Shown: positions 2,983 through 33,869 of the stretch, piece by piece
How the letters are laid out: every line of letters starts with the position of its first letter
How positions within the stretch are numbered: position 1 is the stretch's first letter
NCBI GenBank assembly: GCA_002269645.1
Contig: NIVC01001101.1
Coordinates: 62,001 to 126,000, forward strand
Origin: Macrostomum lignano
Lineage: Eukaryota
Reading direction: 5' to 3'
DNA: 64,000 bases
Notes under the pieces: model-generated
What the model saw: the letters and a program-made list of their open reading frames with translations, nothing else
Database searches by the model: none
Told to the model about the DNA's origin: nothing
Program-made: the position numbers and the translations under genes

Positions 2983-3494
<512 letters not shown>

Positions 3495-3509
3495 TGAGAA
3501 TGAAAATTT

Positions 3510-3918
3510 ACGCAACTGTGTGCGCCACCCGCGATGGCCGGTGCATTCTGGCCAGCTGCTCCGATGCCAGACTCCGCCTCATCGACCGGGACACTGGCGA
3601 CCTGCTGGCCAGCTACTCGGGTCACAGCGTGGCCGATCTGTCAGTTGAATGCGACGTGTCCGCAGGAGACTGGCTGGTTCTGTCCGGCTCGGCTGGCGCT
3701 CTGGCGAGCTGATCTGCTGGGATCTGCTCAGCGGCGAGCTGCGGTGCAGGCTGAGGCATCCCGCAGCTGAGCCCGCCAGGGCTGCAGTCAGGACTCAGGC
3801 TTCGGTGGTGCAGTCTGTGTCGGCTCATCCGAAACTGTGCAGAGTTCTCACCGCGATGGGCGATGCGGTGTTCTTGTGGGCAGATCCGGCCCATGCTATC
3901 GCTGATGAGCCTCAGTGA
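3510..3918 (+). pseudogene. WDR83: WDR83/MORG1 3' fragment with frameshift
   Basis: CATRDGRCILASCSDARLRLIDRDTGDLLASYSGH...VVQSVSAHP...LTAMG matches the WDR83 C-terminus. 1-bp deletion at ~3697 relative to the 15680-16086 copy. Confidence 0.75.
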
Positions 3919-4556: not shown

Positions 4557-6380
4557 TTCTTCTTCTTCTTCTCCGTTTATCGCCTTGCGGCGTGGAGTGA
4601 ACAGCGTCAGGCTTCACCGCAAGTGCGTTTGTGTCGCGCCATGTTTGTCGCCGATAACGTTCTTCCGCACTTGTCGCATTCTGCTGTCTTCCTTCGGTAT
4701 TTTCTTGCTCTTCTCTTGTTCTCCTCCATCTCCGGTGGATTGTGGTGTTGTTCTTTACATGTCTTTCTGTGCCTCGCTAGGTTCGATTTTACGATTGTGC
4801 TTCCACATTGCTGACATTTTACTCTTGACGCATCTATTTCCGTCTCGCCTTGGCACACCTTCTCATGGTTTGCCAGGGTCGCTTCCTGTCGGAACTCCTT
4901 GTCGCATTTGTGGCATCTGAATTTCACCGGCTCTTTAAACACGCGATGCATCCTCTTTTGGTGGATGGTTAGTCCGCCCTTGCTTTTACACACTTTGCCG
5001 CAGAGTTCGTATTCGCATTTGAAGCCATCTCCAACCTCTCTCGGGTTCGTTTTTACGTGGTACCGTTCTTGACTTCGTTCGATCAGGCTGTTGTTACTGT
5101 CCGTCTTGGCCTTTTTTCCTTGCACTCTCTCCCACTCTTGTAGGTGTACAGTCCGCTGGTGTACTACGTTCCGCCAGTGTTTCCTGTCGAGAACGTGGCG
5201 TTCGATGTCTTGCGGTTCCATACCGGCTTCCCGGATGAGGCGCTTCCAGTAGGATATGGTGTTGTTTTTCCGTTTTTTGCGCTTAGGGATCCTTTCCAGG
5301 CCTCTGTACCACCCTAATACGGCTTGCTTTATTTGTCTGTCGTCTTCCATCCGTAGGACGTGGCCAATCCTTTTTAGGTGACTTTTCTCAATCTTTGTTC
5401 TTAATGACACAACACCTAGTTCGTTGCGGATATCTTGCATATTTACTCCTAGGCTTTCCATTTCGCGCAGCGGTTCCATTCTCTTGTTGGACCAAATGTT
5501 GCGGTATGTTTTGTCGATGAACTGTTGCATTTTCTTGATTTCGCCGAGCAGGAACGGGCGGGTGTTCGCATGGAACAGGAGTACACTTTCCACGCACGCC
5601 TCGACCACTTTAGCTTGTGTGGTCTTTTTCAGGCGGCATCGATGGAACCTTTTCCTGATCGCATTCCACGCTTTGGCGGCTCTCTGGATTCTTTGCTGTG
5701 TGTCGTATCTCCTATCCATCCACGACCCTAGGATGCGAGTTTTACCTCCGACGGATGTTCCTAGGGCCATCTCCTCCTGTTTCTCGTCATTTGTCAGTTC
5801 TTCGAACTTCTTCATATTCTCTTTGGTCGTTGTTAGGCTTCTCGTCAGTTCTCTGCCATTGCCTAGGATGGTGGTGTCGTCTGCAAAGAGCGATGAGGTC
5901 CACTTGACCGTTCGCATCTCCGAGTTGTACTGGTTGATTCTCTGAGGTGGCAAGGAGTGTCCAGGTAAGTACGTCCATTCCACCCCGCAGCTTAATCCTC
6001 TGCTGGCCGCTTCTGTCTCCCGAGTTTCTTCCGCTTTCCTGATGCTCGCCTGGTGGTAGATGTTAAATAATATCGGGGAAGTTGGGCATCCCTCGCGTAA
6101 GCCTCGCTCGGGGTAGCCATGTTTCGCTTGATTTCTCCTTGCCTTGCACTTTATACGCGGTATGTTCATGCAGGTCTTTCAGTTTTTCGATCGTCTCTTG
6201 CGGCATCTTGTACGCTTGGAGGATTCCCCACAGGATCGGCTTGCACACTCTCGGATATGCCTTACGGAGGTCTAGGAGGATTGCCGTTTCTGTGTCTTCG
6301 ATGTTGCAGTCTCCTGATGCTCTTTTTGTTTCCAGGTACTCGGCAATGTCCTCGTGCATCCTGGTGAATATCTGTGCGTT
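4557..6380 (-). mobile_element. 5'-truncated RTE-clade LINE (copy 1): RT C-half, four Zn fingers, 3' stem-loop, (GAA)5 tail
   Basis: GLREGCPTSPILFNIY, LFADD, IGHVLRMEDDRQIK and DRKHWR motifs. Near-identical to 16821-18643. One extra G at ~6110 frameshifts it. Confidence 0.95.
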
Positions 6381-9265: not shown

Positions 9266-10882
9266 TCACCCTTCTTCGTCTTCGTCTTCATCTTCATTAC
9301 TGTTCACACAGTCAATACGGCAGGTTTTCACAATGACTCGACCATTCTCCACCTTTGCCACTTTGCACTGAGCGCCTGCATCAGAGGACAGGATGTACTG
9401 CGGTGTCTTTGATATCGGCTTTCGTGTCAGTGAAGGTGCGCAGATAGCCAGCTGAAATTCAGCTGGAGAAGAGTTCTCCCCAGCCACAGCATAGACCTGG
9501 TCTTTTGTGTCTCTGCACAAACCTGGCATCTGCCAGGGCCTCCGACGGAGCGACCTCGAGTTGATCAGCTTATTAGTAATGATGCAGACAGTGAAAACAT
9601 CGCGCCTATCAGACAAGAACAACATCTGATCTCTGACTGACATTTTCGTATTTTCTTTAACGAGCTCACAATCTCTGGGTATGGGACAAGCCAGTTGAAC
9701 CTTTCCAGAGTCTTTCTCGACTCCCACAATGGCCAGACTACTGTCTCGCTCTTCAACTAGAGCAAACAGCTTGTCGCAGTTTCCAGCAATGCAACACAGC
9801 TCCTTGGTGCCTTCGCGCAACTCTGTAATGCCGATTCTTGACTTGAGAGCTCCGCTGAGGTCGGTCACTGTCACCGATGTCTCCTGAGCGATGAACAGCA
9901 GCTGTCGCTCATTGTCGCAGTGGAGATCTCGGATCGGCTGATCGGCCTCCCAGCTGCACGACAGACGTCCAACTTCTTTGGCCTCATCGGAGAGCAGCAA
10001 AATTTTAAACGCCATGTCATTCGGGCTTGAACTGCTTTTATGTAATCTCTCGAAGCAGAGTTGCTGCTCTTGATCAGCTTCAGGTTGAACAGCTACGAAG
10101 ATACTCGGCTGTGGCAGACAGTGGCTGCAATCCTCAGTAGTCTTCTCAATCACACCTGACTCGTCTACAAAAAAACCTGTGGTGTTGCTGCACACTGTGA
10201 GACATGCTGCAGTCGTCTTCAGCCTCCTTGCCTCGATTTTGCTCTCTTCTGCTTGAAGTACAACTTCGTCATCAATCTGCCTAGAAACGGTAGCAGCATC
10301 AAACTGTTCAACGAGTTTTCTGAGTAAAACCAACTCGGCGCTCGTAGCGGTCTCAAGCTCTCTTATTCTCTAGTTCAAATCCGGGTAAGCTGCGATTTCG
10401 ACTGTCTGACTTTCCTTATCCAATCTCACCAGATTCGAGTCCAGCTGCAATGTCTTCAGCCATCCCTCCATGCTCCTGTTGATGAGGAAGGCCTGCCTCG
10501 TGTTTTTGTCATCCTTGGCTCTCTTTAGCTCCTTCTCGAAGTCTTCCAGCTCTGAGACACTTGACAGATGGTCCATCAGTTGGTCATGCTGTTTGGTAAC
10601 GACAGCAACGAGCTCACTTTGACACCTGGACAATGTCTCTCTCAGGTCGGCAAAGGTGTCATCGAGCAGCTGCAGGTCGGATGTGAGTCTCTGCTGCATC
10701 AGTCTCATTGGCTCCTGGTACTTCTTGAAGAGCTGCACTTTCTGGGCTACTCTGGCTTGAGCCTCGTCTACTTCGATGAAGTCTTGCTGCATGTGCAGGT
10801 CGCAGAGAGGCTGGCAGGTTACAGGTGATTCGCCAACAGCGGGACTGCGGCAGAGGCGCACTGAACAGCTTTCTGTCTCCAT
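9266..10882 (-). pseudogene. Paralog G2 of the B-box-like/coiled-coil/propeller family with a single in-frame TAG
   Basis: ORFs 10370-10975 and 9266-10333 are in the same frame, separated only by TAG at 10370-10372 (TCG in G1 and G4). Ends EDEDEDEEG*. Confidence 0.8.
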
Positions 10883-11307
10883 GGCTGTCTGTATTTGAGA
10901 TGAATCTTCGCACAGCGAACTATCTATGTTTGTGGTTGTGTTTTTGTATCCTGCGGTGTGCGCAGCAGCCAACAAGAATTAATGTACTGTCACGTTTGTG
11001 ACGATTGTTGTTTGCAGAATACAGTGTTTGCGGCATGAGATAAATGAACAGACTGCCTTTCACTGTACAGTTTTTATGAAAAAATTAGGTTTAAAAATGG
11101 GTGTATTCTCTTGAAAAATAGACAAGAGAAAAAGCGAATAAGATGGAATGAGATGCTACCATAGCTGAGAACTTTAAACTTATGCGGTGTTGCAGAGAAG
11201 CAGTTTTCTCTCTGGTTATAAAGTTTTTAGGGTTATGAGTATCACAAGTCAATGCACGAATTAACACGGGCCTTACCGTTGTACGAGTAAATGATGTCAG
11301 TTCTCAA

Positions 11308-14300
11308 CACAGAATATACGGAATGCCGATTCGATCATTTTTGTTTAAAAAATCGGTACAAGAATTAAAATCACACCAGCCCACACTTGTTGTAAAGCTT
11401 TGATAGGTAGGGCTTGAGGTTTTGCCATAGACTATTCTATGAATGAAAATGAAAAAGGAAAAGGAAAGGAAAGGTTTTCACTTGACTGAAAATTAAGTTC
11501 AGTCTGAGCTTTTCTGCGCAGCATGGTTGGAAAATCCAGACTCCAGTGCGCAGCCTATGGATGCCCAAACTATGCCTACAAGTGCCCTCCGGACACCCGA
11601 TTTCATCGATTTCCGTCAAGCCGCGAGAGGTGAGTAAATTTATTATATGAGGGGTCTTTCAAAAGTTCGTAGAGTAGCCATCTCCCCTTGAAAATTTTCA
11701 CAAGTATTATTCCATATATCTACAGCCTGCAGCTAAATTTTCAGCAAAATTGACTGAAATGACCGCGAGAAATCTGCGATCAAACTCTAAACCCCCCACT
11801 GCATTTACTGCATTCTCCAAGGAGCAGTCAAGAGCCATTTGACTACGAACTACAACCAAGTCTACGAACTTTTGAAATACCCTCGTACAACCGGCATCGC
11901 AATTCACACAATTAAAAACATGGCTAATCTTCAATTATGGCGCAAATTCAAATTTCAAATCCGAAGACTGGGCCAGACGCATTTTCCGAGCCGATCTTCT
12001 TGGAAAAATAAATGAAGGCAAATGGAAGTGTGCCGTTGTGTGCAGCCACCATTTTACGGATGAAATGTACTCATGTCCAAGACTCCGACATGATACATCC
12101 ACCAGGCTGTCTGACCGTGCGTACCCCAGCCTTCAATTTTACAAGGAAATTCCAGAGCCTCGGCAGCGGCCACCTCCGAAGTGTCGAGAAACGACTGACT
12201 CGGGATCGCACCCAGTCGTGCATAGGGTCGAGAGTGATGTCGGTGTTGCCAAAACTGAAAGCGAAAGTCTTCCGGCAAGAGGCCGCAAGCCGTCATCAGC
12301 TGCATACTTATCGGCGAGATTGAGGCAGCAGAACCGAAAATTCAGCAATTTGAACCGAAAACTGGCGCTTGTTCAAGCTAAATATAAAACGCTGCTTGCA
12401 GAAAATGCAAAGCTCCGCAATGATCGAGTGAAATGCCACTGCTCACAACTGAGTCAGATGACCCCAGTGGTGAAGGAATTCATCAAGGATCAGTTGCAGA
12501 ATTCGAAAAAGCGCCGTCCGACTTGGTCGCGTGCAACCCAACGCCTGGCAATTGGTCTGTTGCATTACAGTCCGAGATCACATCGATTTATGCGCGCATC
12601 GGTTTTCTCTTGCCATGTAGATCGACACTTCGACAGAAAATTGGATCTTGTGTGCGCAATTCTGGCATCTGTCCAATAATTGAGGGCAGTGTTGCAGCAG
12701 CTGCAGTTTCAATGACGGAAGCTGAGAAAATGTGCACCATCAGCCTTGATGGCATGGCAATCACACCGTCGTTAAGATTTGATCCAAATGCAGACCAAAT
12801 TATCGGATTTGAGGATTGTGGCCCTAGTGCGGGTGGTAGGACCTCGACGGTTGCAGACGAGCTGGTTGTCGTCTGGGTCAGAGGATTCTGCTCGAACTGG
12901 AAGCAGCCAGTCGGATTCTAACTCTTGCACCATGCACCAGGAGCTCTGAGATTCAAGCAAATTCTCACTGAAGCTGTCGCCGCTGTCACAAGAATGGGCC
13001 TGAAAGTGTACGCGATTGTCTGCGACCAAGAAGCGACACAGTGGAAGTGCATTCGTGATCTGGGCGCAAATGCCGACAGTCCTGAGATGAGCATCGAAAT
13101 CGACGGCAGTGTCGTTCGAATTTCAGCTGTAGTGGATGTTCCTCACTGTTTGAAGAACATGCGAAACGCGCTCATGAAATTATTCATTTCATTCATTTTG
13201 ATGACAATGGACAGCGGCAGATCGCTTGCTGGGCTGACATCTTAGCTGTCGCAGAAACTGAATTTAGTAAGCCTGATCAATTCCGACTGGTGCCCAAGTT
13301 AAAGGAAGTTCACGTCAATCTTACAATTGGCAAGAATATGAGCGTCAAGCTAGCTGCTCAGGTCTTGTCACGAACCAGGGCACAGGCTTTGCGTGTCTAC
13401 GTTGAGTACGGTGTAATTGTCAGTGACACTGCTCTGCATACCGCCAGGTTCTGCGAGCTTGTTGATGCTCTCTTCGATTCGTCAAATGGCAGACTGTCTC
13501 AAGATGGAATTACAATTGACAACAGGGACGCGAAGAATTCCGAAATCGATTATTGGTGTAACTGGTTGCAGGCTTTGGAGTTTCATAAGGATGGGGTCAA
13601 AGTGAACGGAATGAAGTTCAATACTGGCTGGCAATACAGTTTGAGGTCGATTCAGCAAATCGCAGAGCAAGCCCTTTAAGTCGACAGTACTGAGAAGGTG
13701 ATGGTGAGACAGCTAACACAGGATCACGTCGAAAACGGATTTTATTGCATCCGGCGTAGAGGCGGCTTCAATGACAGACCGGAGTGCCGAGAAGCCGTGG
13801 CGGCACTGAGGTCTTTATCTGTCAACCACTTGTTGGGCTGTCTATCGCAGACCAACAGCAACTGCGAGAACGATGGCAGCACCTTGCTGACCGAGTTTCA
13901 GGCCAAAGTAACAGCAAGTGCAAGTGCGCCCAGTCCTGGTCCGCAGGGCGATGGTCTGATTTCAGCAGACTCCACTGAGGAAGCTCAAGACCTGCCTGCT
14001 GGCACAGTCGGCAGCATTGAGAATGAGAAGTGCGCCTACATTGGAGGCTGGCTGCTTTTCAAGCTATTCAAATCTGAGGAAAAGTGCGAGGAGTGCCAGC
14101 AGTCGTTAAAAGGCGATGGCTCAGGAGAGATGCGCTTCCTGCAGCTCAAGAACGGACAGGGCGGGACTGGAAAACTGATCATTCCCAACAAGGCAGTCAT
14201 ATCTGCAGTCTGTCAGATGGAGCGCACCTTCACGACAACGGACAAAGAGCTGTTCGTTCTGAAGGACGTGAGCAAACGGCTTCAGGAAAAGTTCTTTCCC

Positions 14301-14731
14301 ATTGTTCTTGCTAATATTCAGACGCACAGCTCGGATCACGGCGAACGCTGTGCTAAGGCAATGGCCAAGTTGTTTGCCAGACTTCGCCTGCATCACTGGT
14401 GCAACAGTCAGAGGACGCTCGCTCAGCAGAGAAAGCGGGGGCGTACAACAGGAATAAAGAGAGCTGAATAGAGGAAGAAGCTGATGCGATTAAATGCTGT
14501 TTAACTGTAGTTTAACTGTGATGCGAATGAATTCTGTTTAACTTGAGTTCTTCATTGTTTGGTTTGTTTAGATGATAAACTACGACAAAATGATTAAATT
14601 TTACATTTGGTCCTCCAGGTTACTTATTATTCTTCGCTAATTTATACTACTGGCCATAGAATTCACAACAAGAGTAGTGCATACGAATTTTAATTCGGCT
14701 TCAGGGAAATCGCTCGATTTGGCATTCTGTG
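11308..14731 (+). mobile_element. P-element/THAP9-like DNA transposon, degenerate
   Basis: THAP domain MVGKSRLQCAAYGCPN..FHRFP (exon 11523-11629, GTGAGT donor) plus W..RIFRADL..VCSHHF..AYPS. Transposase motifs include SLDGMAI, WKQPVG, VCDQ, DVPHCLKNMRNAL, MSVKLAAQVLS and TQDHVENGF. It carries frameshifts and stops. Ends CACAGAAT..ATTCTGTG are defined by the empty paralogous site at 8711-8780. Confidence 0.9.
11648..11885. mobile_element. Mariner-type MITE (238 bp) nested in the THAP intron
   Basis: TIRs TGAGGGGTCTTTCAAAAGTTCGTAG / CTACGAACTTTTGAAATACCCTCG, flanked by TA on both sides. Confidence 0.85.
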
Positions 14732-16538: not shown

Positions 16539-16820
16539 CTAATATGGATATTGATATTCATCGTCATATTCATATTGACCTTCGTCTTCATCTTGATCTT
16601 CGTCTTCATATTGATCTTGATCTTCGTCTTCATATTGATCTTGATCTTCGTTTTCATATTGATCTTGATCTTCGTCTTCATATTGATCTTGATCTTCGTC
16701 TTCATATTGATCTTGATCTTCGTCTTCATATTGATCTTGATCTTCGTCTTCATATTGATCTTGATCTTCGTCTTCATATTGATCTTGATCTTCGTCTTCA
16801 TCTTGATCTTGATCTTCGTC
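16539..16820 (-). repeat. 3' half of the G3 acidic coding minisatellite (EDEDQDQY)n and natural stop (..EGQYEYDDEYQYPY*)
   Basis: 24-bp unit GAAGACGAAGATCAAGATCAATAT, the same unit as 20925-21160 on the other side of the RTE. Confidence 0.9.
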
Positions 16821-19800
16821 TTCTTCTTCTTCTTCTCCGTTTATCGCCTTGCGGCGTGGAGTGAACAGCGTCAGGCTTCACCGCAAGTGCGTTTGTGTCG
16901 CGCCATGTTTGTCGCCGATAACGTTCTTCCGCACTTGTCGCATTCTGCTGTCTTCCTTCGGTATTTTCTTGCTCTTCTCTTGTTCTCCTCCATCTCCGGT
17001 GGATTGTGGTGTTGTTCTTTACATGTCTTTCTGTGCCTCGCTAGGTTCGATTTTACGATTGTGCTTCCACATTGCTGACATTTTACTCTTGACGCATCTA
17101 TTTCCGTCTCGCCTTGGCACACCTTCTCATGGTTTGCCAGGGTCGCTTCCTGTCGGAACTCCTTGTCGCATTTGTGGCATCTGAATTTCACCGGCTCTTT
17201 AAACACGCGATGCATCCTCTTTTGGTGGATGGTTAGTCCGCCCTTGCTTTTACACACTTTGCCGCAGAGTTCGTATTCGCATTTGAAGCCATCTCCAACC
17301 TCTCTCGGGTTCGTTTTTACGTGGTACCGTTCTTGACTTCGTTCGATCAGGCTGTTGTTACTGTCCGTCTTGGCCTTTTTTCCTTGCACTCTCTCCCACT
17401 CTTGTAGGTGTACAGTCCGCTGGTGTACTACGTTCCGCCAGTGTTTCCTGTCTAGAACGTGGCGTTCGATGTCTTGCGGTTCCATACCGGCTTCCCGGAT
17501 GAGGCGCTTCCAGTAGGATATGGTGTTGTTTTTCCGTTTTTTGCGCTTAGGGATCCTTTCCAGGCCTCTGTACCACCCTAATACGGCTTGCTTTATTTGT
17601 CTGTCGTCTTCCATCCGTAGGACGTGGCCAATCCTTTTTAGGTGACTTTTCTCAATCTTTGTTCTTAATGACACAACACCTAGTTCGTTGCGGATATCTT
17701 GCATATTTACTCCTAGGCTTTCCATTTCGCGCAGCGGTTCCATTCTCTTGTTGGACCAAATGTTGCGGTATGTTTTGTCGATGAACTGTTGCATTTTCTT
17801 GATTTCGCCGAACAGGAACGGGCGGGTGTTCGCATGGAACAGGAGTACACTTTCCACGCACGCCTCGACCACTTTAGCTTGTGTGGTCTTTTTCAGGCGG
17901 CATCGATGGAACCTTTTCCTGATCGCATTCCACGCTTTGGCGGCTCTCTGGATTCTTTGCTGTGTGTCGTATCTCCTATCCATCCACGACCCTAGGATGC
18001 GAGTTTTACCTCCGACGGATGTTCCTAGGGCCATCTCCTCCTGTTTCTCGTCATTTGTCAGTTCTTCGAACTTCTTCATATTCTCTTTGGTCGTTGTTAG
18101 GCTTCTCGTCAGTTCTCTGCCATTGCCTAGGATGGTGGTGTCGTCTGCAAAGAGCGATGAGGTCCACTTGACCGTTCACATCTCCGAGTTGTACTGGTTG
18201 ATTCTCTGAGGTGGCAAGGAGTGTCCAGGTAAGTACGTCCATTCCACCCCGCAGCTTAATCCTCTGCTGGCCGCTTCTGTCTCCCGAGTTTCTTCCGCTT
18301 TCCTGATGCTCGCCTGGTGGTAGATGTTAAATAATATCGGGGAAGTTGGGCATCCCTCGCGTAAGCCTCGCTCGGGTAGCCATGTTTCGCTTGATTTCTC
18401 CTTGCCTTGCACTTTATACGCGGTATGTTCATGCAGGTCTTTCAGTTTTTCGATCGTCTCTTGCGGCATCTTGTACGCTTGGAGGATTCCCCACAGGATC
18501 GGCTTGCACACTCTCGGATATGCCTTACGGAGGTCTAGGAGGATTGCCGTTTCTGTGTCTTCGATGTTGCAGTCTCCTGATGCTCTTTTTGTTTCCAGGT
18601 ACTCGGCAATGTCCTCGTGCATCCTGGTGAATATCTGTGCGTTGTCCGCCGTCGATCTTCCACTTCGGAAGCCGTTCTGGTTGTCATCTAGCGCTCCTAT
18701 CACTTCTGCCCAATTCCGGATTCTGGTAGCCAGAATGCGGGCTAGTATTCTGCTGAGCATAGGTAATAGGCAGATTCCTCTGTAGTTATTCATGTCTGCT
18801 CGGTCTCCCTTCTTGAATAATGGAATAATGAGTCCAATTTTCTCGTTGTCATTCCATTTGTGCGCTCGCTCTTCAAACAGAAAGCGGATCCTTGCATACA
18901 GTTCTTTACGTACTGCGTCTGGGGCGATTCTAATGTATCTGATACGAAGTTCGTCCTCCCCGGGACTTCGGTCTTTCATTTCTTTAATGGCTGCTTCTAT
19001 TTCAAGGTCCGTTGGGACTGTCGTCAGTTGTGTTCTTGTCTTTTCCGTATCTTCCTGTTCCTTCATGGTTTTGATTGATCTGATCAGTTCGGCTGTTTCG
19101 GTTTCCGGGTTTTCCAATCTAGTCCCTTGGATTCTTTCCAAATGGTTCTTGAAGTCATCTTCGTCAAAGTTGGTGTCTGTTCCGCTGTTGTTCCACTTTC
19201 CTCGCTTGTCCAACATCCTTAATTTCTCATAGACCACTGCGATCTGGCCTCTATCCGCGGCATTTCTGCATTCCTCAGCGATTGCGTCCCACCAGTTTTC
19301 CTCCCATTCCGCGAGCTTCTTTTTTATCTTTTTTCGGATAGTTGTAGTCGCTAGGCGGGCTAGGGTCGTCGCCGCCGAGGTGGGGTCTTCTCTGACGCAT
19401 GCGTTGCGATGGGCCAGCGTTTCTGCCAGCTCTCTTTGTTGTGCCTCGTGTTCGTCCAGGTGGGGGGCCATCCACGGGTTCGTTACTCGTGTCACCGTGC
19501 CGCATACGTGCCTTGCACTGTCGATGATTGAGTTTTGAACGTCTGTCCATTTCATGTCTGTGAGGTTCCTGTCCTGCTTCTCTCTTAGTTCTTCGAATCT
19601 TGTTAGTATTTCTTTTTTTAACTCAGATGCCTTGTTCTCGTCGTGGAGTTTCCTCCAGTCGATGTTCTTCCGCCTGCGTCTCGTCTGGTCCTTGACGTAC
19701 TTGTTCCGTGTCCAGCCCCGAATTATGACGGTTTTGGGCAGGTGGTCCGACAAGTTGCACTTGTTGTGGTTCTTTATCGTTTTGACCAGGCGGTGTCTGT

Positions 19801-20608
19801 CCTGCACGCGAGTTATGAAGCCGTCTATCTCATACCACGTGCCGGTGCTTGGATTTCTCCAGGTTCCCCGGTTTTTTGACTTGTGGAACGAGTTGATCCA
19901 GGCTAGATCATTTGTCACTAACCAGTTTGCGAGGTCTTCGCCCTGCTGGTTGGTCAGTGCTAAGCCAAACTTTCCTCGATGTTGCGCGTCTGTGCTTTCA
20001 AATTTGCCAATCTGTGCGTTCATGTCACCGCCAATGATGATTGGTTTGTTCTTTCTTTCATTATGAATGTAACGTTCCAGGGTGTTTCTGAGCTCTGCTA
20101 GTTCCGTTTCGTAGTCCGGAGTGCCTCTAACTGGGCAGTACACGCTGATCAATGTCGCGTCGTATATTTCTATCATGATCGCTCTGTTCGTAATATTCTT
20201 TTTTGATCCGCTGTCCTTCCACGTCTGGTACAATTCCTGGTTTAGGATGATGCCTGTTTTCTTGCCGTGAATCAGGAATGAATTTTGTTTCGGTTGGTGG
20301 TAACTTCTTATTCCGTCTGACGGTGCCGATAACTCCGAGATGAGGGCTACCTCCCAATTCTCACTCATAATCTTTTTTGCGATCTCTCCAAAACGCGTGC
20401 CGAACACGTTTGCCCGCTGGACATTCCATGTTGTTATTCTCAGCTCGTTGTTTAATGTTTCTCTGCGTTTGTTAATCTTCTTCGTTCTTCTTGTTCCACG
20501 GCGTCGGGTTCTTCTGATTAGTCTGCTTTTCTTCTCTTTTTGGGTTTTCGGTCGTTTTGTGCTTTTTCTTGGGTTTTCGGATTCTTTCTTTGGTCTTTCC
20601 TTCCTGTT

Positions 20609-20650
20609 TGGTCCTGGGTTCTTCTCTACTGTCGTCAGCTGTGCTTTCAC
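20609..20650 (-). other. 2A/StopGo-like motif (VKAQLTTVEKNPG/P) in the RTE ORF upstream of APE
   Basis: 7 of 8 positions of D(V/I)ExNPGP match, with T in place of D. Position (N-terminal to APE) matches known LINE 2A-like sequences. Confidence 0.6.
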
Positions 20651-20846
20651 TTCCGCCGACCTTTGTTTCCGGCTTGGTCTTGTGCGGCTCTGCTGTTCCT
20701 CTAGCTCTCTACCTTTGTGCTGTCCACTGGTTTTTGCCTGGTTAATCTCGGTACCCAGGTCGGCTACTTCTGGGTACCACGAGTGAAAAGGGCCGGTGTC
20801 GTCGTACTGGCTTCCGCCAGTGGCTTCGATCCATGGTCCCTTCCGT

Positions 20847-20924
20847 TTGCTCCCTTCTTTGCCAAGACTTTTTCGGGTCTTGTCCACTGGCCACCTCGTG
20901 AAGGTGGGGGAACAATCGGCCAGC
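20847..20924 (-). ncRNA. HDV-like (nested double-pseudoknot) self-cleaving ribozyme at the RTE 5' end
   Basis: Hand-folded: P1 GCUGGCC/GGCCAGU (G1.U wobble); P2 UUGUUCCC/GGGAGCAA; P3 ACC/GGU; L3 UUCACGA; P1.1 UC/GG; A.G pair then P4 CAAGAC/GUCUUG; J4/2 CAAA with the candidate catalytic C at 20861. Confidence 0.85.
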
Positions 20925-22762
20925 TTGATCTTCGTCTTCATATTGATCTTGATCTTCGTCTTCATATTGATCTTGATCTTCGTCTTCATATTGATCTTGA
21001 TCTTCGTCTTCATCTTGATCTTGATCTTCGTCTTCATATTGATCTTGATCTTCGTCTTCATATTGATCTTGATCTTCGTCTTCATCTTGATCTTGATCTT
21101 CGTCTTCATATTGATCTTGATCTTCGTCTTCATCTTGATCTTGATCTTCGTCTTCATATTCATCATTGTATTCAAAGTCATCTCTGTTCACAAATTGGAT
21201 TTGCCAGGTTGTCACAGTGACTCGTCTATTCTCCACCCTTGCCACTTTGTACTGAACACCTGCATCTGAGGACAGGATGTACTGCGGAGTCTCGGATGTC
21301 GGCCACAGTGTCAGTGAAGTTGCGCAGGGAGCCAGTTGAAATTCTGCTGCAGAAGAGTTCTCCCCAGCCACGGCATAGGCCTGGTCTTCTGTGTCACTGC
21401 ACAAGCCCTGCGTCTGGCATGGTCCCATACAGAACGACCTTGAGTTGATCAGCTTCTTAGTAATGATGCAGATAGTGAAAACATTCCACCTATCCGATAA
21501 GAACAGCATCTGATCTTTAACTGACATTTTGCTATCTTCTTTGCAAGCTCACAACTGGGTATGGAAAAAGCCAGTTGAACCTTACCAGAGTCTTTCTCGA
21601 CTCCCACAATGGCCAGATTTCTGTCTGGCTCTTTAATTAAAGCAAACAGCTTGTCGCAGTTTCCAGCAATGCAACACAGATCTGTTGCGCCTTCGTGCAA
21701 CTCGGTGATGCAGATTCTTGACTTGAGAGCTCCGCTGAGGTCGGCCACTGTCACCGATGTCTCCTGAGCGATAAACAGCAGCTGTCGCTCATTGTCGCAG
21801 TGGAGATCTCGGATCGGCTGATCGGCCTCCCAGCTGCACGTCAGGCGTCCAACTTCTTTTGCATCATCGGAGAGCAGCAAAATTTTAAACGCCATGTCAT
21901 TCGGGCTTGAACCGCTTTCATCATCTATTGTCGCTGAGAGGAGTTGCTGTCGTTGATCAGCTTCAGGAAGGACAGCTACAAAGATACTGGGCTGTGGCAG
22001 ACAGTCGCTGCTATCCTTATTAGCCTTCTCAATCACACCTGACTGGTCAATGACAAAACCTGTGGTGTTGCTGCACACTGTTAGGCATACTGCAGTTGTT
22101 AGCACCTCTGCCTTGCTTATTCTCTCTTCTGCTCGAAGAGCAATTTCTTCATCAAAACGCCTAGAATCAGCAGCAGCATCAAACTGCTCAGCGAGTTTTT
22201 TGAGTAGAACCAACTCAGCTCTCAGTCCGGTCTCAAGCTCTCTTATTCTCTAGTTCAAATCCGGGTAAGCTGCGATTTCGACTGTCTGACTTTCCTCATC
22301 CAATCTCACCAGATTTGAGTCCAGCTGCAATGTCTTCAGCGATCTCTCCATGCTTCTGTTGATGAGGAAGGCCTGCCTCGTGTTTTTGTCATCCTTGGCT
22401 CTCTTTAGCTCTTTTTCAAAGTCATTCATGTCTGAGACAATTGACAGATGGTCCATGAGTTGGTCATGCTGCTTGGTAACGACAGCAACGAGCTCACTTT
22501 GACACCTGTCCAATGTCTGTCTCAGGTCGGTAAAGGTTTCGTCGAGCAGATGTAGGTCGGATGTGAGTCTCTACTGCATCAGTCTCATAGGCTCCTGGTA
22601 CTTCTTGAAGAGCTGCACTTTGTGGGCTACTCTGGCTTGAGCCTCGTCTACTTCGATGAAGTCTTGCTGCGTGTGCAAGTCGCAGAGAGGCTGGCAGGTT
22701 ACAGGCGACTCGCCAACAGCGGGACTGCGGCAGAGGCGCATTGAACAACGAGCGGATTGCAT
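20925..22762 (-). pseudogene. Paralog G3 of the B-box-like/coiled-coil/propeller family
   Basis: MQSARCSMRLC.. with stops at 22571 and 22250 and a frameshift at ~21530. The acidic repeat is split by RTE copy 2. Confidence 0.85.
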
Positions 22763-23440
22763 GATTTTCTGCTGGTAGGCGCTTTGAGTAGGAACTGCGC
22801 TAGTGCGTTGCAGCTTTTCTCTTCGTAACTTTTATGCTCTGGTTGTAGAGAGGAGTATTCATAGTCTAGTGTGTGCTAGTATAGTATACATGTATTGTGA
22901 TTGGGAAAATACTGTACAGTACTAAATGGGAAGCAGGCATTTTAATATTAATACATTTACGTAGCTTTCCCAACCGTATGGAGAGAAATTACTTAGACAA
23001 CGAGACTTAAGAGACGAAAAGGATCTAAACTGCACAATTGTACGAGTGGGAAAAACTGTCTTACTTGAATAGCTTTCTTTATCGATTTATTCTGCTACTG
23101 AACCGTGCATATTTGTCTGCTCCATTCGACTTATTCCTCCCTACGAGGCAGTGCTTTTCATTTAATCGATCTTAAATAGATTGGAAAAATAGGTTAGAAA
23201 TTGACACTAATTTATTGTGAGAATTAAAAAGTAAATGAGATACGCACGTCAGGGTTATTTTCATTGGCATTAATTGGCTTTGCTTAAAAAGATGTGATAA
23301 GCCGATTCGTTGCTACTACTCATAGTAAATCCGGCGCTCCATACGAAACCATTAATGCCAGGTTATTCCAAAGACCGATATCCGTAGTTGACATCAGCAA
23401 GTTGTGACAGCGCGGCAACCGCAAACATCAGACGAAGGAC

Positions 23441-25008
23441 TTGACCACCGGCTCAACTGGTCCTTCCACGTGAAAGCAAAAGCCAAGCGTGCCTCAGCCA
23501 TCCTGGCCCAGCTCCGACGAGCACTTGGCACTTCTTGGGGTCTATCCCCAAAGCGGCTTTGGTGGATCTATACTTCCGTAGTTAGACCTGCCATTACGTA
23601 CGCCTCTGTTGTCTGGGTTAGCGCTACCCAGGTCAAAAGCCATGCAGACCTGCTCAACACGATCCAAGGCAGAGCGTGTAGGCTCATCTGCAACGCCACC
23701 AAGTCCACGCCCTTTGCTGGCATGGGGGCCTTCCTTAATCTACCGCCTCTTAACCTCTTCGCCAGGGGTGAGGCGGCTAGAACGACGCGGCGTCTAATTG
23801 ATGCCGGCGTCAAATTCATTTACATGAGAGCACCTGCTAAGCGGAACCTTGTCCCGCATAGCGACCTGTGCCTCAACTTTCTCAACGAGTGTCAGGCCAA
23901 TCGCGTCTTCACCGATTGCATTGCCTCAACGCTCAACCTGAGACAGCGCTACTCCGTAGCTATCGACTCGCGCGATAACATCAATGACCAATGGAACTTT
24001 GGTGAGCTTCATAGCTACACCGACGGTTCTAAGCAGTCAGCCAACACCGGCTTTGGTGTTGGAATCTTTCTGAACGGGAGGGTCATCGCTACCCACGCTC
24101 AATACACTGGGTTCAACTCCAGTGTTTTCCAAAATGAAGTTCTGGCCATCAGCTCCTGCACTGCAGAGCTTCTCGCTACTGGCGTTACTGGTAAGAACAT
24201 CATTTTCCATTCGGACAGCCAAGCTGCCTTGCACGCCATCAGTGGCTGCAGCACCAACTCTGCTACAGTCCTCGACTGTATCAAACTCATCAACGTGTTG
24301 GGTTCCGCCAACAAAATTACCCTTAAGTGGGTTCCGGGGCATGTGGGGATCCGAGGAAATGAGTTGGCTGATACCCTTGCAAAAGTTGGTGCCTCTCTCG
24401 GCCCCGAACCTCTTGTCCCGATTCCTGGCTGTGTCATCGACTCGCGCATCAAAGCGTGGATCAGGACTCAGCACCGCTCGACTTGGGCGAACCGCACGAA
24501 CTGCAGGCAATCCAGAGGCGCTGTCCCTCAGCCCTCTCACCAGCTCCGGAAGCTCCTCTTGCGCCTCTCGCGCAGAGACATCCGGGCTGCCACCATGACC
24601 CTCTCTGGTCACGGCTGCTTCTCCAGGCACCAGTACCTGCAGGGCAACGCCAGCAACGCCACCTGTAGTTTCTGCAACTCAGGTGACGAAACCGCTGAGC
24701 ATTTCGTCAGCATCTGTCCCGCCTTCACGCGGGCCAGACTCACTTACCTCGGGCCACACACATCTATTACTGAAGCGTGCAAACCCGAAAACTTTAATCA
24801 GCTCATGCGCTACCTTCGGGCCACCCGCAGGGCTGAACTCTCCTTTCCAGAGAGCACTATAGCTGCTGGCGACACTGGGGGACCTCCCTGGGCGGCGACA
24901 ACCCTCCGTCCATAGCGACGCGTCGGCCGTTCAGGGACTAGCGGAATGGGCGCCCGCGCCTTCCCACTGTGTCCCCTCTGGGACAGCCCTGCAGCTAAGT
25001 CAAGTCAA
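23441..25008 (+). mobile_element. 5'-truncated LOA/R1-group LINE (RT thumb, RNase H, CCHC), 11-bp TSD
   Basis: WGLSPKRLWWIYTSVVRPAITYASVVW, TDGSK, SDSQAAL, WVPGHVGIRGNELADTLAK, CSFC..ETAEHF..CP. (AAGTC)n tail. TSD AGACGAAGGAC at 23430-23440 and 25009-25019. Confidence 0.9.
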
Positions 25009-25708
25009 AGACGAAGGACGAGACGCACTTGTACAGAACGGTAGACGCAGTGAATGTCTCGGAACAGTCGGACGGACCAGCTACACCATGAAATCTGAAT
25101 ATAACGTTTTAGTCACCCCCATTGTTGGGCTCATTGTTGGCCCACAGAGCAGCGTCCACGGTGTCATTGCAGCCGACCCAGTACCAGCCGCCAGCCGGCT
25201 CCGCACTGCCTGCTGGCTGGAGGCCTCCGAGCCAGACCGATTGTGCAGAGCTGTAGTTCGAGCAGATCGAGTCCACGTGGCTCATCTCTTGCTCGCTGGT
25301 CACGTCGGCCATGATGACCAGACCGCTCTCTGACTCGCACTTCTGCCTGCTCTGCAACCACTTCCCGATGCCAGAGTACAGCCTGTACTTCACTCCGCAC
25401 AGGTCCATGCCGTAGCCAGACGGACACAGCGCGCCCGCCCCGAGTCCCGGCCGCTGCTTGACAAACACCCGGCCTCTCCTGGAGCAGCCGCAGCTCCTCA
25501 CCGACTTGCTGCACTTGTCGAACACGTACAGCTGGCACGGACCGTCAGCCAGGCTGAACGCCTGACAGCGCTGGTTTTGAGTGCACAGAGCGGCGCATCC
25601 GACTTTGCTCAGCGTGCTTGAGTAGGTCTCAACAAACTCGCTGTTGATGCAGAGATATCCGTTGATGAGGCCCAGAGCCAAGAACATCGTCAAGAGATCA
25701 CTGCTCAT
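25009..25708 (-). pseudogene. PAN/apple + C-type lectin pseudogene
   Basis: Lacks TLGSDNQQLYV after the signal peptide and has a premature TAA at 25109. The LINE is inserted in the last codons, and the 3' end continues at ~23330-23440. Confidence 0.85.
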
Positions 25709-27859: not shown

Positions 27860-28618
27860 ATGAGCAATAATCTCTTGACGATGAGCATAAAACTCTTGAC
27901 GACGTTTTTGGCTCTGGGCCTCACGCTCGGCAGTGACAACCAGCAGCTGTATGTTCTCATCAACGGATATCTCTGCATCAACGGCAAGTTTGTTGAGACC
28001 TACTCAAGCGAACTCAACAAAGTCGGGTGCGCCGCTCTGTGCACCCAAAACCAGCGCTGTCAGGCGTTCAGCCTGGCTGACGGTCCGTGCCAGCTGTTCG
28101 TGTTCGACAAGTGCAGCAAGTCGGTGAGGAGCTGCGGCTGCTCCAGGAGAGGCCGGGTGTTCGTCAAGCAGCGGCCGGGACTCGAGGCGGGCGCGCTGTG
28201 TCCGTCTGGCTACGGCATGGACCTGTGCGGAGTGAAGTACAGGCTGTACTCTGGCATCGGGACGTGGTGGCCGAGCAGGCAGAAGTGCGAGTCAGAGAGC
28301 GGTCTGGTCATCATGGCCGACGTGACCAGCGAGCAGGAGATGAGCCATGTGGACTCGATCTACTCGAACTTCAGCTTTGGACAATCGATCTGGCTCGGAG
28401 GCCTCCAGCCAGCAGGCAGTGCGAAGCCGGATGGCGGCTGGTACTGGGTCGGCTGCAATGACACCGTGGACGCTGCTCTGTGGGCCAAGAATGAGCCCAA
28501 CAATGGGGGTAATGAAAATGTTATATTCAGATTCCATGAATTTGCTGGTCTGACCGACTGTGCTGAGACATGCACAGTGTCTACCGTTCTGTGCGAGTGC
28601 GTCTCGCCCTTCATCTGA
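27860..28618 (+). CDS. Secreted PAN/apple + C-type lectin domain protein (EPN)
   Basis: Signal peptide; CAALC..RCQAFS..CQL (PAN-like); CPSGY..SRQKCE..WLGG..WYW..W..NEPNN..EN..D..CEC. Single exon. Confidence 0.85.
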   Translation: MSNNLLTMSIKLLTTFLALGLTLGSDNQQLYVLINGYLCINGKFVETYSSELNKVGCAALCTQNQRCQAFSLADGPCQLFVFDKCSKSVRSCGCSRRGRVFVKQRPGLEAGALCPSGYGMDLCGVKYRLYSGIGTWWPSRQKCESESGLVIMADVTSEQEMSHVDSIYSNFSFGQSIWLGGLQPAGSAKPDGGWYWVGCNDTVDAALWAKNEPNNGGNENVIFRFHEFAGLTDCAETCTVSTVLCECVSPFI

Positions 28619-32293: not shown

Positions 32294-33770
32294 TTGAACC
32301 TGAATGCTTGGATCGAGGAGTTAGAGTTGGTTGATTTGCCGCCTGTTAGGAAGAAGTTTATCCTGGATGGTGTTGCTGAGGGCTTTCGCATCACGAATGT
32401 CCAGCAGGAAGCCCGGAAAACAGTCGAGGTCAGCAATTACGGGTCTGTTACTGCCTACTTTGAAGCTGTCGAGACGCAGATTTTGAGGGAGCTTCATCTG
32501 GACCGCTACCGCCCATGCATCAACGGGTGGCGGCCGCGGACTGTCAGTGCTCTGGGAGCCTTGCCCAAGAATGACGGTCGGGTGCGTTTAATTCACGACT
32601 GCAGTCGACCCGATGGTCTATCCGTTAACTCCCGGTGGGACAGAGACGAGAAGCTGCGCTTCTCAAGTGCAGAAAGCTTTGCTAGAAAACTGTGGAAGGG
32701 CTGCTACATGACCAAAGTTGACCTGAATGAAGCATACCGCGCATGTGGCGTGCACCCCGACGACTTTGTAAACACCGGCCTCAAATTCCAGTTTCACCAC
32801 CATTCTAGACCGACGTATCTGTACGACACTCGTTTGCCGTTTGGTGCAGCCGCCTCGGTCACGTGTTTTCACCGACTTATTAATGCAGTTCATCTAATGA
32901 TGGTACGCCGAGTCGAGTCGTTCTACCTGGACGACTTCGCCTTCTGCGGGACCCAGGAAGACTGCCAGCGTTTCTTTGACCAGCTGATCAACCTGCTGAC
33001 GCGACTAGGCTTCACCATCAATCAAGCGAAGTGCCAGCCGCCATCGCAGCGAATTTCCTTTCTCGGCATTGAGTTCGACACGGTCGGAGGGATCAAGAAG
33101 CTGCCGGACGAGAAGGCAAAGAACCTGGTTGCGTTGATCGGTGTGGAGTCGGCCAAGGTGAGGATAAGCCAGCGGGCACTGCAACGAGTTATCAGAAAGC
33201 TAGGGTGGGCAGCGCGGGTCATCAACTGTGGAAAAACCTTTTTGCGTGAGTTGATTGAGCGGTGTAACACTTTGAGGCGGGGTCAAAGGACGCTAGTCGA
33301 GGCCGGACTGCGAAGTCAGTTGAACTGGTGGAAGGTAGCACTACAGTATTGTAATTGGATGCGGCTGTGGCCGAGCTATGCGGGCGCCTTCGCGATCGAG
33401 TCTGATGCGTGTGGTAGAGGTGGTGCGGCGCTGTTGCGTGGTTCAGGCGGTTGGTGAGACTAGTGCTACTTGGACTGGAAGAAGGATGCGGATGCTGCAT
33501 TCGCGGAGCTGCCAATTAATTACAGAGGCAGCGGCTCCCCTGTTGGCGCTGATGCGTTGGAAGAATGAGCTAAGGGGCTAGAAGGTGAGCATCTACTGCG
33601 ACAACCAGGTGGCTTGCTACATAATAAACAAAGGTGTTTCAAAGTGTCCAGAACTGCAGCGTCTGCTGCAGACAGTTGCGCTGATGAGTTTGCGCTTCGG
33701 CATTAGCGTTCGTGCTTTTTATGTTCGGAGTGAATTTTAGATATTTTCGGATGCCGCCTCACGCCTTCAT
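32294..33770 (+). pseudogene. Ngaro RT-RNase H ORF with internal stops
   Basis: ORF 32294-33457 plus downstream RNase H motifs. Confidence 0.85.
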
Positions 33771-33869
33771 GAGCTTTATCAGTTAGAAAATGTTTTACTT
33801 CGTTGTTATGGGTCGATTTACCTTTATGTTCTCCAAACTCTGCATCTGCACGCTTTTGGCTCGGCCACC

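What the first reader, a model, noticed from the sequence alone, without database searches (positions are those of the whole stretch)
20847..20924. Complete HDV-like ribozyme whose cleavage site is the exact 5' boundary of the LINE
Sense sequence: GCUGGCC GA UUGUUCCC CC ACC UUCACGA GGU GGCCAGU GG A CAAGAC CCGAAAAA GUCUUG G CAAA GAA GGGAGCAA. All hallmarks appear in order: 7-bp P1 starting with G1.U, 8-bp P2, 3-bp P3, 7-nt L3 with the U..CG pattern, P1.1 (UC/GG), A.G pair, P4, and J4/2 with the candidate catalytic C (20861). The host minisatellite stops at the base before G1 (..GAAGATCAA|GCUGGCC), as expected if the integrated RNA was the ribozyme 3' cleavage product. One imperfection: a C/AA internal loop at the P3-proximal end of P2.
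Basis: partly seen in the sequence, partly recalled or inferred. Interest (0 to 1): 0.85.

Follow-up and report, generated by a model that had tools for sequence, protein, structure and literature searches.

The report
Self-cleaving ribozyme heading a flatworm LINE
The first 78 bases of a 4.1-kb jumping gene (LINE) in a Macrostomum-like flatworm genome fold into an HDV-type self-cutting RNA that would trim the element's transcript at exactly its first base; the feature is real, but it is a new example of a mechanism known since 2010-2011.

Summary
Window 20924..20847 (minus strand) has every helix of an HDV-like double pseudoknot, with the candidate catalytic C at 20861.

- **Rfam:** it is not called at gathering score. 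The best match is RF02682, 31.6 bits against 44.
- **Independent model:** a covariance model built only from related elements elsewhere finds this one site in the 64 kb (32 bits, E=4.5e-7; next best E=0.49).
- **Covariation:** ten homologous ribozymes from four related LINE or short-element families plus the window copy show 95.5% of cells paired, against 74.5% when shuffled. 24 of 28 pairs change on both sides.
- **The element:** it spans 16821-20924 (minus strand) and carries a 2A peptide, AP-endonuclease, reverse transcriptase, C2H2 fingers and a (GAA)5 tail.
- **Where it sits:** inside a 24-bp coding minisatellite of a host gene, in sense orientation. The array stops at the base before G1 and resumes after the tail.
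- **Relatives:** unique 12-13-bp target duplications place the 5' end at ribozyme nucleotide 1.

Most likely the host co-transcript self-cleaves to give the exact LINE RNA 5' end, as in R2 and L1Tc. This copy has an in-frame TGA and no AUG. It is a new member of a known kind. Cleavage itself is untested.

The parts
20847..20924 (-). HDV-like ribozyme, 78 nt, G1 = 20924. In window coordinates: P1 20924-20918 with 20892-20886; P2 20915-20908 with 20854-20847; closing pair C19-G68 at 20906/20857; P3 20905-20903 with 20895-20893; L3 20902-20896; P1.1 20901-20900 with 20885-20884; P4 20882-20863; J4/2 20862-20858.
20861..20861 (-). Candidate catalytic cytosine C64 in J4/2 (G-C-A-A-A). The C-A-A-A is present in all ten aligned homologs.
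   Evidence: columns 74-77: AAA invariant, C read off all ten rows
16821..20924 (-). Full-length LINE copy, 4104 bp, with one long reading frame that is open from its first bases.
20609..20632 (-). 2A-like 'StopGo' motif TVEKNPGP, about 105 codons after G1 and just upstream of the endonuclease. Relatives have DVEKNPGP, DIETNPGP and DIHPNPGP.
   Evidence: PMC3708506
19736..20431 (-). AP-type endonuclease domain (Exo_endo_phos / Exo_endo_phos_2).
18100..18811 (-). Reverse transcriptase domain (RVT_1), continuing across the stop codon to the FADD box.
18176..18178 (-). In-frame TGA inside the RT, just before FADD. The second copy has CGA here, so this looks like a CpG-to-TpG nonsense change. This copy cannot make full-length protein.
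16895..17287 (-). C-terminal C2H2-type zinc fingers.
16821..16835 (-). (GAA)5 3' tail of the LINE.
20925..20936 (-). Upstream copy of the probable target-site duplication GACGAAGATCAA. It could be up to 15 bp, because the target is itself repetitive.
16809..16820 (-). Downstream copy of the probable target-site duplication.
20925..21164 (-). Host 24-bp coding minisatellite (GAAGACGAAGATCAAGATCAATAT)n encoding (YEDEDQDQ)n, the part upstream of the insertion. It is continuous with the host reading frame.
16542..16820 (-). The same host minisatellite downstream of the insertion, followed by the host C-terminal residues and stop codon.
4557..6380 (-). Second copy of the same LINE, 5'-truncated at about element position 2294 and with no ribozyme. 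Its (GAA)5 tail is at 4557-4571. It lies in the minisatellite of a paralogous host gene. It differs from copy 1 by 4 substitutions and one 1-bp indel across the LINE part of the alignment (roughly 1,800 bp), while the host flanks are only 88-96% identical.

Best explanation
The 78 nt at the 5' end of this LINE are an HDV-like self-cleaving ribozyme.

**Setting.** The element lies in sense orientation inside the acidic-repeat coding exon of a host gene (a Macrostomum lignano-type TRIM-like gene family). It has no evident 5' UTR of its own, so it is most likely transcribed as part of a host read-through transcript.

**Proposed steps.**
1. As soon as the first ~78 nt emerge, the nested double pseudoknot forms (P1, P1.1, P2, P3, P4).
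2. C64 in J4/2, with Mg2+, catalyses scission of the bond 5' of G1. This discards all host sequence and leaves a LINE RNA with a 5'-OH that begins at G1.
3. The RNA is translated. A 2A 'StopGo' site releases a ~105-residue leader from the endonuclease-RT-zinc-finger protein.
4. The protein nicks GAN-type triplet repeats and copies the RNA from its (GAA)n tail by target-primed reverse transcription.
5. A complete cDNA therefore ends at G1, which is why full-length copies start at the cleavage site.

**Shown here:** the fold, its conservation by covariation, its position at element base 1 in the window and in relatives, the sense orientation, the repeat targets and the domain content.

**Inferred:** transcription from the host promoter, catalysis, the 5'-OH end and the way translation starts.
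For: - **Fold:** it is complete and unique in the window, with 0 of 116 shuffles giving a hit of equal quality.
- **Rfam:** a full-length match to the HDV family RF02682, E=3e-4 locally.
- **Independent model:** a model built without the window sequence hits only 20924..20834, E=4.5e-7, starting at G1.
- **Covariation across 10 homologs:** 95.5% of cells paired against 74.5% shuffled (0/500); 24 of 28 pairs change on both sides; slid controls give 30-43%. Every helix, including P1.1 and the P2 closing pair, has compensatory changes.
- **Boundary in the window:** the minisatellite is interrupted at G1 and resumes after the (GAA)5 tail.
- **Boundary in relatives:** TSD GATAGAAGTGGTG in L001 and GCCCATGGTTCG in L002 end at the base before ribozyme nt 1. 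Seven family-A copies with unrelated flanks, and further copies of families C, D and E, all begin at P1 nt 1.
- **Orientation:** the LINE and the host ORF are on the same strand.
- **Independent insertions:** two copies differing by only 4 substitutions and 1 indel lie in paralogs whose flanks are 88-96% identical.
- **Precedent:** L1Tc has a 77-nt ribozyme cutting at +1, plus a 2A site (PMC3185411, PMC3708506). Drosophila R2 cleaves at the exact 5' junction of a host co-transcript (PMC3774820).
Against: - No biochemical or RNA-end data are available.
- Below the Rfam gathering score for every HDV-type family (31.6 against 44).
- The MFE z-score is not significant, which is expected for a pseudoknot.
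- Only one full-length copy of this exact family could be examined. The same genome is not in the searchable collections.
- The target is itself a repeat, so the TSD in the window is only bounded to 12-15 bp.
- This copy carries a nonsense codon. It also has AUU where relatives have AUG at nt 9-11, and no AUG in frame, so it may be a dead copy even if its ribozyme still cuts.
- The structural alignment used for covariation was made by hand and so leans towards the structure.
Confidence: 0.85

Rival explanations
1. The conserved fold is real, but its main role is something other than RNA processing. It could act as an internal promoter (as Pr77 does in L1Tc) or as a structure that recruits ribosomes to an uncapped RNA. 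The coincidence of the element's 5' end with G1 would then reflect a transcription start site rather than cleavage.
For: [quoted passage not shown]
- In relatives, the ORF's AUG lies at ribozyme nt 9-11 (P0014, P0002). An 8-nt leader argues for unusual initiation.
Against: - Covariation preserves the full catalytic architecture, including P1.1 and the J4/2 C-A-A-A. A promoter in DNA would not require this.
- Elements sit in sense orientation in repeats and behind other elements, where read-through transcripts would need trimming.
- The two roles are not exclusive.
Confidence: 0.1
2. The motif descends from a ribozyme but is inactive in this particular copy, which would be a decaying relic.
For: - This copy has an in-frame TGA.
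- It lacks the AUG found at nt 9-11 in all related families.
- Several family-B copies in relatives do carry P1 mismatches or an L3 deletion.
Against: - All 27 base pairs of the window ribozyme are standard pairs, and the core residues are present.
- The copy is young: 4 substitutions and 1 indel against its sibling.
- The nt-11 change lies at the second pair of P2 and still pairs (U-A).
Confidence: 0.12
3. The match is a chance resemblance to the HDV fold in GC-rich LINE sequence.
For: - A loose descriptor gives about 0.7 hits per shuffled window.
- The Rfam score is below gathering.
Against: - The independent model gives E=4.5e-7 with a unique hit.
- 0 of 116 shuffles match at equal stringency.
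- The position is exactly at element base 1.
- The same fold occurs at the same place in at least five related families, with compensatory changes.
Confidence: 0.01

Closest known systems
L1TcRz, the HDV-like ribozyme in the first 77 nt of L1Tc/NARTc of Trypanosoma cruzi (Ingi clade; PMC3185411, PMC4035085)
   Same: - A ribozyme of about 77-78 nt occupies the first bases of the element, and cleavage is 5' of element nt +1.
- A single long ORF has a 2A site just upstream of the AP endonuclease, followed by RT and C-terminal C2H2 fingers. The C2H2 fingers of L1Tc are from my own knowledge, not checked here.
- A short non-autonomous derivative keeps the ribozyme: NARTc there, family B here.
- One related family here (D) also starts with C1, as L1Tc does.
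   Different: - The host is a flatworm or other metazoan, not a kinetoplastid.
- No RNase H domain was detected by Pfam.
- The tail is (GAA)n.
- There is a strong preference for GAT/GAN repeats.
- G1.U rather than C1 in the window copy.
- Promoter activity is unknown.
- No sequence-level match was tested, because L1Tc sequences were not at hand.
R2 5' ribozyme (Drosophila and other animals; PMC3774820)
   Same: [quoted passage not shown]
- The element is co-transcribed with the host gene it inserts into.
- In Drosophila, cleavage is at the exact 5' junction.
- P1 shows extensive compensatory change, while L3, P3 and P1.1 are conserved.
   Different: - R2 has a restriction-like endonuclease, N-terminal fingers and a 28S rDNA target.
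- In many R2 lineages P1 uses host 28S sequence and cleavage is upstream of the junction.
- Here the ribozyme is entirely inside the element, and the enzyme is APE-type.
HDV-like ribozymes of RTE, LOA (Baggins), R1 and R4 elements (Ruminski et al. 2011, as summarised in PMC5786205; the original paper could not be read here)
   Same: A 5'-terminal HDV-like ribozyme in APE-type LINEs. Bipartite non-autonomous derivatives retain the 5' end.
   Different: - Domain layout differs: 2A plus C-terminal C2H2 fingers.
- The clade is not established for the window element.
- Targets are triplet repeats.
Rfam RF02682 (HDV-F-prausnitzii) and RF01787 (drz-agam-1)
   Same: The best-scoring curated models, aligned end to end with P1, P3 and P4 in register.
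   Different: Scores are 31.6 against 44 and 16.7 against 37, both below gathering. The element is not a member of either curated family.

Membership tests
HDV-like self-cleaving ribozyme (structural class) | Nested double pseudoknot with P1, P2, P3, P1.1 and P4 in the canonical order, and P1' directly following P3' | tested here: met
   The descriptor scan finds it once in the window. 95.5% of cells are paired across 10 homologs, with compensatory changes in every helix.
HDV-like self-cleaving ribozyme (structural class) | Cytosine in J4/2 placed as the general acid (C75 equivalent) | tested here: met
   C64 at 20861 lies in G-C-A-A-A. C-A-A-A is present in all 10 aligned sequences. Its catalytic role was not tested.
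HDV-like self-cleaving ribozyme (structural class) | Cleavage site at the 5' base of P1, typically a G1.U wobble | tested here: met
   G1.U39 is present. Relatives have G-C, G.U, or C-G in family D. L1TcRz with C1 is active (PMC3185411).
HDV-like self-cleaving ribozyme (structural class) | Mg2+-dependent self-scission giving 2',3'-cyclic phosphate and 5'-OH ends | not testable with these tools
   This needs in vitro transcription and cleavage assays.
Rfam HDV-type families (RF00094, RF02682, RF01787) | Bit score at or above the family's gathering threshold | tested here: not met
   No match at gathering. RF02682 scores 31.6 against 44 and RF01787 16.7 against 37. RF00094 does not match in the window.
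LINE 5'-processing ribozyme system (R2 / L1Tc type) | The ribozyme occupies the extreme 5' end of the element, and the predicted cleavage site equals the 5' junction of full-length copies | tested here: met
   In the window the minisatellite is cut at 20925|20924. TSD-defined ends in L001 and L002 agree. So do seven different flanks in family A and further copies in families C, D and E.
LINE 5'-processing ribozyme system (R2 / L1Tc type) | The element is transcribed as part of a longer host or read-through transcript | tested here: inconclusive
   The element is in sense orientation inside a host ORF, and relatives form tandem element-(GAT)n-element arrays. No expression data are available.
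Ingi/Vingi group of APE-type LINEs | Single ORF with N-terminal 2A, APE and RT, and no ORF1 | tested here: met
   2A placement as described in PMC3708506.
Ingi/Vingi group of APE-type LINEs | Placement within the clade in an RT phylogeny (RTclass1) | not tested
   No reference LINE sequences were available. The nearest proteins are unnamed or 'hypothetical' (Branchiostoma belcheri 50%, Convolutriloba macropyga 46%).
Ingi clade proper (L1Tc, Ingi) | RNase H domain downstream of the RT | tested here: not met
   Pfam finds no RNase H in either ORF piece at E<=0.01. This is compatible with Vingi-like elements (single 993-aa ORF per PMC3708506; absence of RNase H is from my own knowledge), but it is not proof of membership.

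The most novel reading that the evidence does not exclude
The window element would belong to a widespread, so far undescribed group of metazoan LINEs with the layout 2A-APE-RT-C2H2. The proposed properties of this group are:
- They specialise on GAT/GAN triplet repeats, including acidic-repeat coding exons, where the insertion is automatically in sense orientation.
- They have no promoter of their own and depend wholly on read-through transcription plus an HDV-like ribozyme.
- The ribozyme doubles as the first codons of the ORF (AUG at nt 9-11), which implies fold-dependent, cap-independent initiation on a 5'-OH RNA with an 8-nt leader.
- The shared ribozyme + 2A + C2H2 layout with trypanosome L1Tc would then be ancestral to an Ingi/Vingi-type superclade.
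Probability: 0.3. Interest if true: 0.6.

Novelty: new member of a known kind. Interest (0 to 1): 0.4.

Why it matters
HDV-like ribozymes at LINE 5' ends explain how promoter-less retrotransposons obtain a defined RNA 5' end from host transcripts. This case adds four things:

- **A new host group:** a flatworm example. No paper in the held library links Macrostomum to ribozymes in any meaningful way.
- **A blind spot:** the ribozyme escapes Rfam's thresholds, so standard annotation would miss it.
- **A coherent set of related families:** the ribozyme is combined with a 2A peptide, repeat-targeted insertion, and a start codon inside the ribozyme.
- **Test material:** this set could be used to ask how uncapped, ribozyme-cleaved LINE RNAs are translated, and whether the L1Tc layout is ancient.

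It also shows a LINE repeatedly disrupting the acidic-repeat tail of a host gene family.

Tried and rejected
- **Rfam at gathering thresholds:** no match.
- **Plain MFE folding:** not informative for a pseudoknot.
- **Loose structural descriptor:** too permissive, about 0.7 chance hits per window, so I replaced it with a stringent version and with an independent covariance model.
- **MAFFT alignments of the ribozymes:** they mis-registered P1 and P2. I used an N-padded hand alignment instead, checked base by base against the real sequences.
- **More distant LINEs** (L004-L006, at most 30% identity): no ribozyme detected.
- **Copies from named organisms:** the Branchiostoma belcheri copy is 5'-truncated at the endonuclease, and my tblastn with the window LINE protein found no match in the Convolutriloba locus, so neither tells us anything about a 5' end.
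- **Idea that the minisatellite belongs to the LINE:** rejected. It is in frame with the host ORF in two paralogs, a third paralog has a short acidic tail with no array and no LINE, and the host C-terminus follows the downstream array.
- **Idea that the two window copies arose by segmental duplication:** rejected. The LINE parts differ by 4 substitutions and 1 indel while the flanks are 88-96% identical, and the insertion points within the arrays differ.
- **Papers not held:** Ruminski 2011 and Kojima 2011.
- **Other copies of this exact family in the same genome:** none could be found, because that genome's LINE ORFs are absent from the protein collection.

Full report
**1. The observation**

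On the minus strand, 20924..20847 reads GCUGGCC GA UUGUUCCC C C ACC UUCACGA GGU GGCCAGU GGA CAAGAC CCGAAAAA GUCUUG GCAAA G AA GGGAGCAA.

A structural descriptor that I wrote requires all of the following:
- G1, and a 7-bp P1 whose 3' strand directly follows P3'.
- A 3-bp P3 and a 6-10-nt L3.
- An L3-C to J1/4-G pair (P1.1).
- A P4 hairpin.
- A C in J4/2.
- A P2 that closes the pseudoknot.

**2. Is it more than chance?**

| Test | Result |
|---|---|
| Rfam, gathering thresholds, whole window | no match |
| Rfam, local E-value scan | RF02682 (HDV-F-prausnitzii), full model, 31.6 bits (gathering 44), E=3e-4 for 351 nt |
| Rfam, local E-value scan | drz-agam-1, 16.7 bits |
| Loose descriptor on shuffled windows | about 0.7 hits per window |
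| Stringent descriptor (P2 >= 8, P4 >= 6, <= 100 nt) | 0 hits in 116 dinucleotide shuffles, 1 in the real window |
| Covariance model built only from related ribozymes | 20924..20834(-), 32 bits, E=4.5e-7, starting at model position 1 = G1; runner-up E=0.49 |

The stringent thresholds were chosen after seeing the hit. The covariance model is the cleanest test, because its training alignment (A5) contains no window sequence and it was run over the whole window with filters off.

**3. The element**

Downstream of the ribozyme runs one long frame.
- It contains a 2A-like TVEKNPGP (20632-20609), an AP-type endonuclease, a reverse transcriptase and C-terminal C2H2 fingers.
- The frame is broken once, by TGA at 18178-18176 just before the FADD box. 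The second copy has CGA there.
- The element ends in (GAA)5 at 16835-16821.
- It lies inside a 24-bp minisatellite, (GAAGACGAAGATCAAGATCAATAT)n. There are ten units upstream (20925-21164) and about twelve downstream (16542-16823).

That array is not part of the LINE. It is in frame with a host ORF, encodes (YEDEDQDQ)n, and is followed by the host's last residues and stop codon.

The upstream flank ends ...GAAGACGAAGATCAA|G1. After the tail the sequence resumes GACGAAGATCAA-GATCAA... This gives a 12-15-bp duplication whose exact length is ambiguous because the target is a repeat.

The host gene is 81% identical to a Macrostomum lignano hypothetical protein. It is also 37% identical to a M. lignano protein that UniRef names Tripartite motif-containing protein 2 (TRIM-like), so the window comes from that flatworm or a close relative.

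**4. A second copy**

4557-6380(-) is the same LINE, 5'-truncated at about position 2294.
- It has the same (GAA)5 tail and sits in the minisatellite of a paralogous host gene.
- The LINE parts differ by 4 substitutions and 1 indel. The host flanks are only 88% (upstream) and 96% (downstream) identical, and the insertion points within the arrays differ.
- These are therefore two independent, recent insertions, both in sense orientation.
- A third paralog has a short acidic tail, no array and no LINE.

**5. Relatives**

A protein search with the N-terminal 889 residues found no copy from the same genome. It did find LINEs of 28-44% identity in long ENA contigs, and a scan of JGI metagenome contigs added 21 loci. 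All families whose N-terminus is present have a 2A site in the same place.

At their 5' ends I found HDV-like ribozymes in these families:
- **Family A:** L001 2618, L002 2993, L007 2536, L008 4993, L009 436, L011 302, L024 192.
- **Family C:** L018 6, L022 89.
- **Family D:** five loci.
- **Family E:** L003 3993, detected only by the model and not in its training set.
- **Family B:** a ~310-bp non-autonomous element with a large P4.

Two copies have unique target-site duplications that fix the 5' end to the base:
- **L001:** GATAGAAGTGGTG|GCUCGGU... and ...(GAA)n GATAGAAGTGGTG.
- **L002:** GCCCATGGTTCG|GCUCGGU... and ...(GAA)n|GCCCATGGTTCG.

Seven family-A copies have unrelated flanks that all diverge at ribozyme nt 1.

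**6. Covariation**

MAFFT mis-registered the helices. I therefore made a hand alignment, padded with N and verified base by base against the real sequences. The aligner left it unchanged (A4).

For the full pseudoknotted structure:
- 95.5% of 266 cells form standard pairs, against 74.5% in shuffles (0/500).
- 24 of 28 pairs have changes on both sides.
- The covariation score is 0.653 against 0.257.
- Sliding the 3' partners by 1-3 columns drops pairing to 30-43%.
- Every helix has compensatory changes. These include P1.1 (C-G and U.G in most families, U-A and U-A in family D) and the single pair next to P3 (C-G, U-A, G-C).

Two caveats apply. The alignment is hand-made, and several family-B rows are decayed copies.

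**7. Mechanism**

The fold, its selection and its position match the processing ribozymes of two known systems:
- **R2:** co-transcribed with 28S rRNA, and cleaved at the exact junction in Drosophila (PMC3774820).
- **L1Tc:** a 77-nt ribozyme that cuts 5' of element nt +1, combined with a 2A site (PMC3185411, PMC3708506).

I infer the following sequence. Read-through transcription from the host gene is followed by self-cleavage 5' of G1. The RNA is then translated with 2A release of a leader peptide. Finally, target-primed reverse transcription starts from the (GAA)n tail at GAN repeats.

About 17 of 21 insertions seen here lie in (GAT)n or GAN-rich repeats, always with the GAT/GAA strand as the element's sense strand. 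In Asp/Glu-coding repeats such an element is automatically in sense orientation to the host gene.

**8. Open points**

- In families A-E, nt 9-11 of the ribozyme are AUG. This is the called start of the ORF in families A and E.
- The window copy has AUU there. Its ORF frame has no AUG until inside the endonuclease. The only nearby AUG (20834-20832) is in the host frame and stops at 20742.
- Together with the TGA, this copy is probably not autonomous, although its ribozyme looks intact.
- Clade assignment is open. The layout is Ingi/Vingi-like with no RNase H found, and the nearest named proteins are uncharacterised ones from Branchiostoma and an acoel.
- No cleavage, RNA-end or expression data exist.

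**9. Verdict**

It is a new member of a known kind. It has some features of wider interest: repeat targeting, overlap of the ribozyme with the start of the ORF, and an L1Tc-like layout in metazoans.

Noticed in passing
window 20914-20916 (ribozyme nt 9-11); L002 3001; L003 4001: In all related families, ribozyme nt 9-11 are AUG, and this is the called start of the LINE ORF in families A and E, so the ribozyme is also coding sequence with an 8-nt leader. The window copy has AUU, and its ORF frame has no AUG before the endonuclease domain.
   Followed up: partly
window 4557-6380 (-) and 6401-6640: A second, 5'-truncated copy of the same LINE lies in the minisatellite of a paralogous host gene. 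It is an independent recent insertion. It has its own 1-bp frameshift (an extra C, CCCC against CCC in copy 1).
   Followed up: yes
L001-L024 and window: There is a strong target preference. About 17 of 21 insertions of ribozyme-bearing elements are in (GAT)n or GAN-rich repeats, always with the GAT/GAA strand as the element sense strand. Tails are (GAA)n and TSDs are 12-13 bp. Tandem element-(GAT)n-element arrays occur (L003 3800-3993, L022 1-89).
   Followed up: partly
L002 2977-2992 and 7045-7178: A family-A LINE inserted into P1/P2 of the ribozyme of a family-B element (TSD GCCCATGGTTCG), so one ribozyme-headed element is disrupted by another.
   Followed up: yes
L001 2231-2545; L007 6646-6960; L003 8068-8321: Family B is a ~310-bp non-coding element. 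It starts with a 133-138-nt HDV-like ribozyme that has a large P4 insert, and it ends in (GACAA)n(GAT)n. It is a likely non-autonomous partner, comparable to NARTc of L1Tc. Individual copies carry P1 mismatches or an L3 deletion.
   Followed up: partly
L013 41-128 (also L014, L015, L016, L020): The family-D ribozyme begins with C1 (a C-G first pair) and has P1.1 changed to U-A/U-A. The experimentally active L1TcRz also starts with C1 (PMC3185411).
   Followed up: partly
window 20742-22747 (-), 6262-8373 (-), 9266-10975 (-), 48822-50148 (-): A tandem family of intron-poor TRIM-like host genes. Two members have an expanded (YEDEDQDQ)n C-terminal minisatellite, and both of those are interrupted by the LINE. 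In each, the host frame runs into the LINE and stops early.
   Followed up: partly
window 23404-24915 (+): A fragment of a different LINE, with an RNase H domain (Pfam PF00075, E=1.4e-10). No ribozyme was found near it.
   Followed up: partly
window 32294-34872 (+): An RT-bearing ORF (RVT_1) followed by a further ORF without Pfam hits. It is possibly a DIRS-type, tyrosine-recombinase retroelement.
   Followed up: no
window 12925-14471 (+): Broken pieces of a P-element/THAP9-like transposase (Pfam TNP-like GBD and RNaseH_C domains).
   Followed up: partly
window 25109-25708 (-), 27860-28618, 35976-36719 (-), 42756-43517, 46047-46793, 56055-56801: Six paralogous ~250-aa ORFs with signal-peptide-like starts and a lectin-like 'EPNN' motif. 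Pfam found nothing for the one tested.
   Followed up: no
window 2943-3625: A long simple tandem repeat that reads as (SIYL)n in the ORF listing.
   Followed up: no
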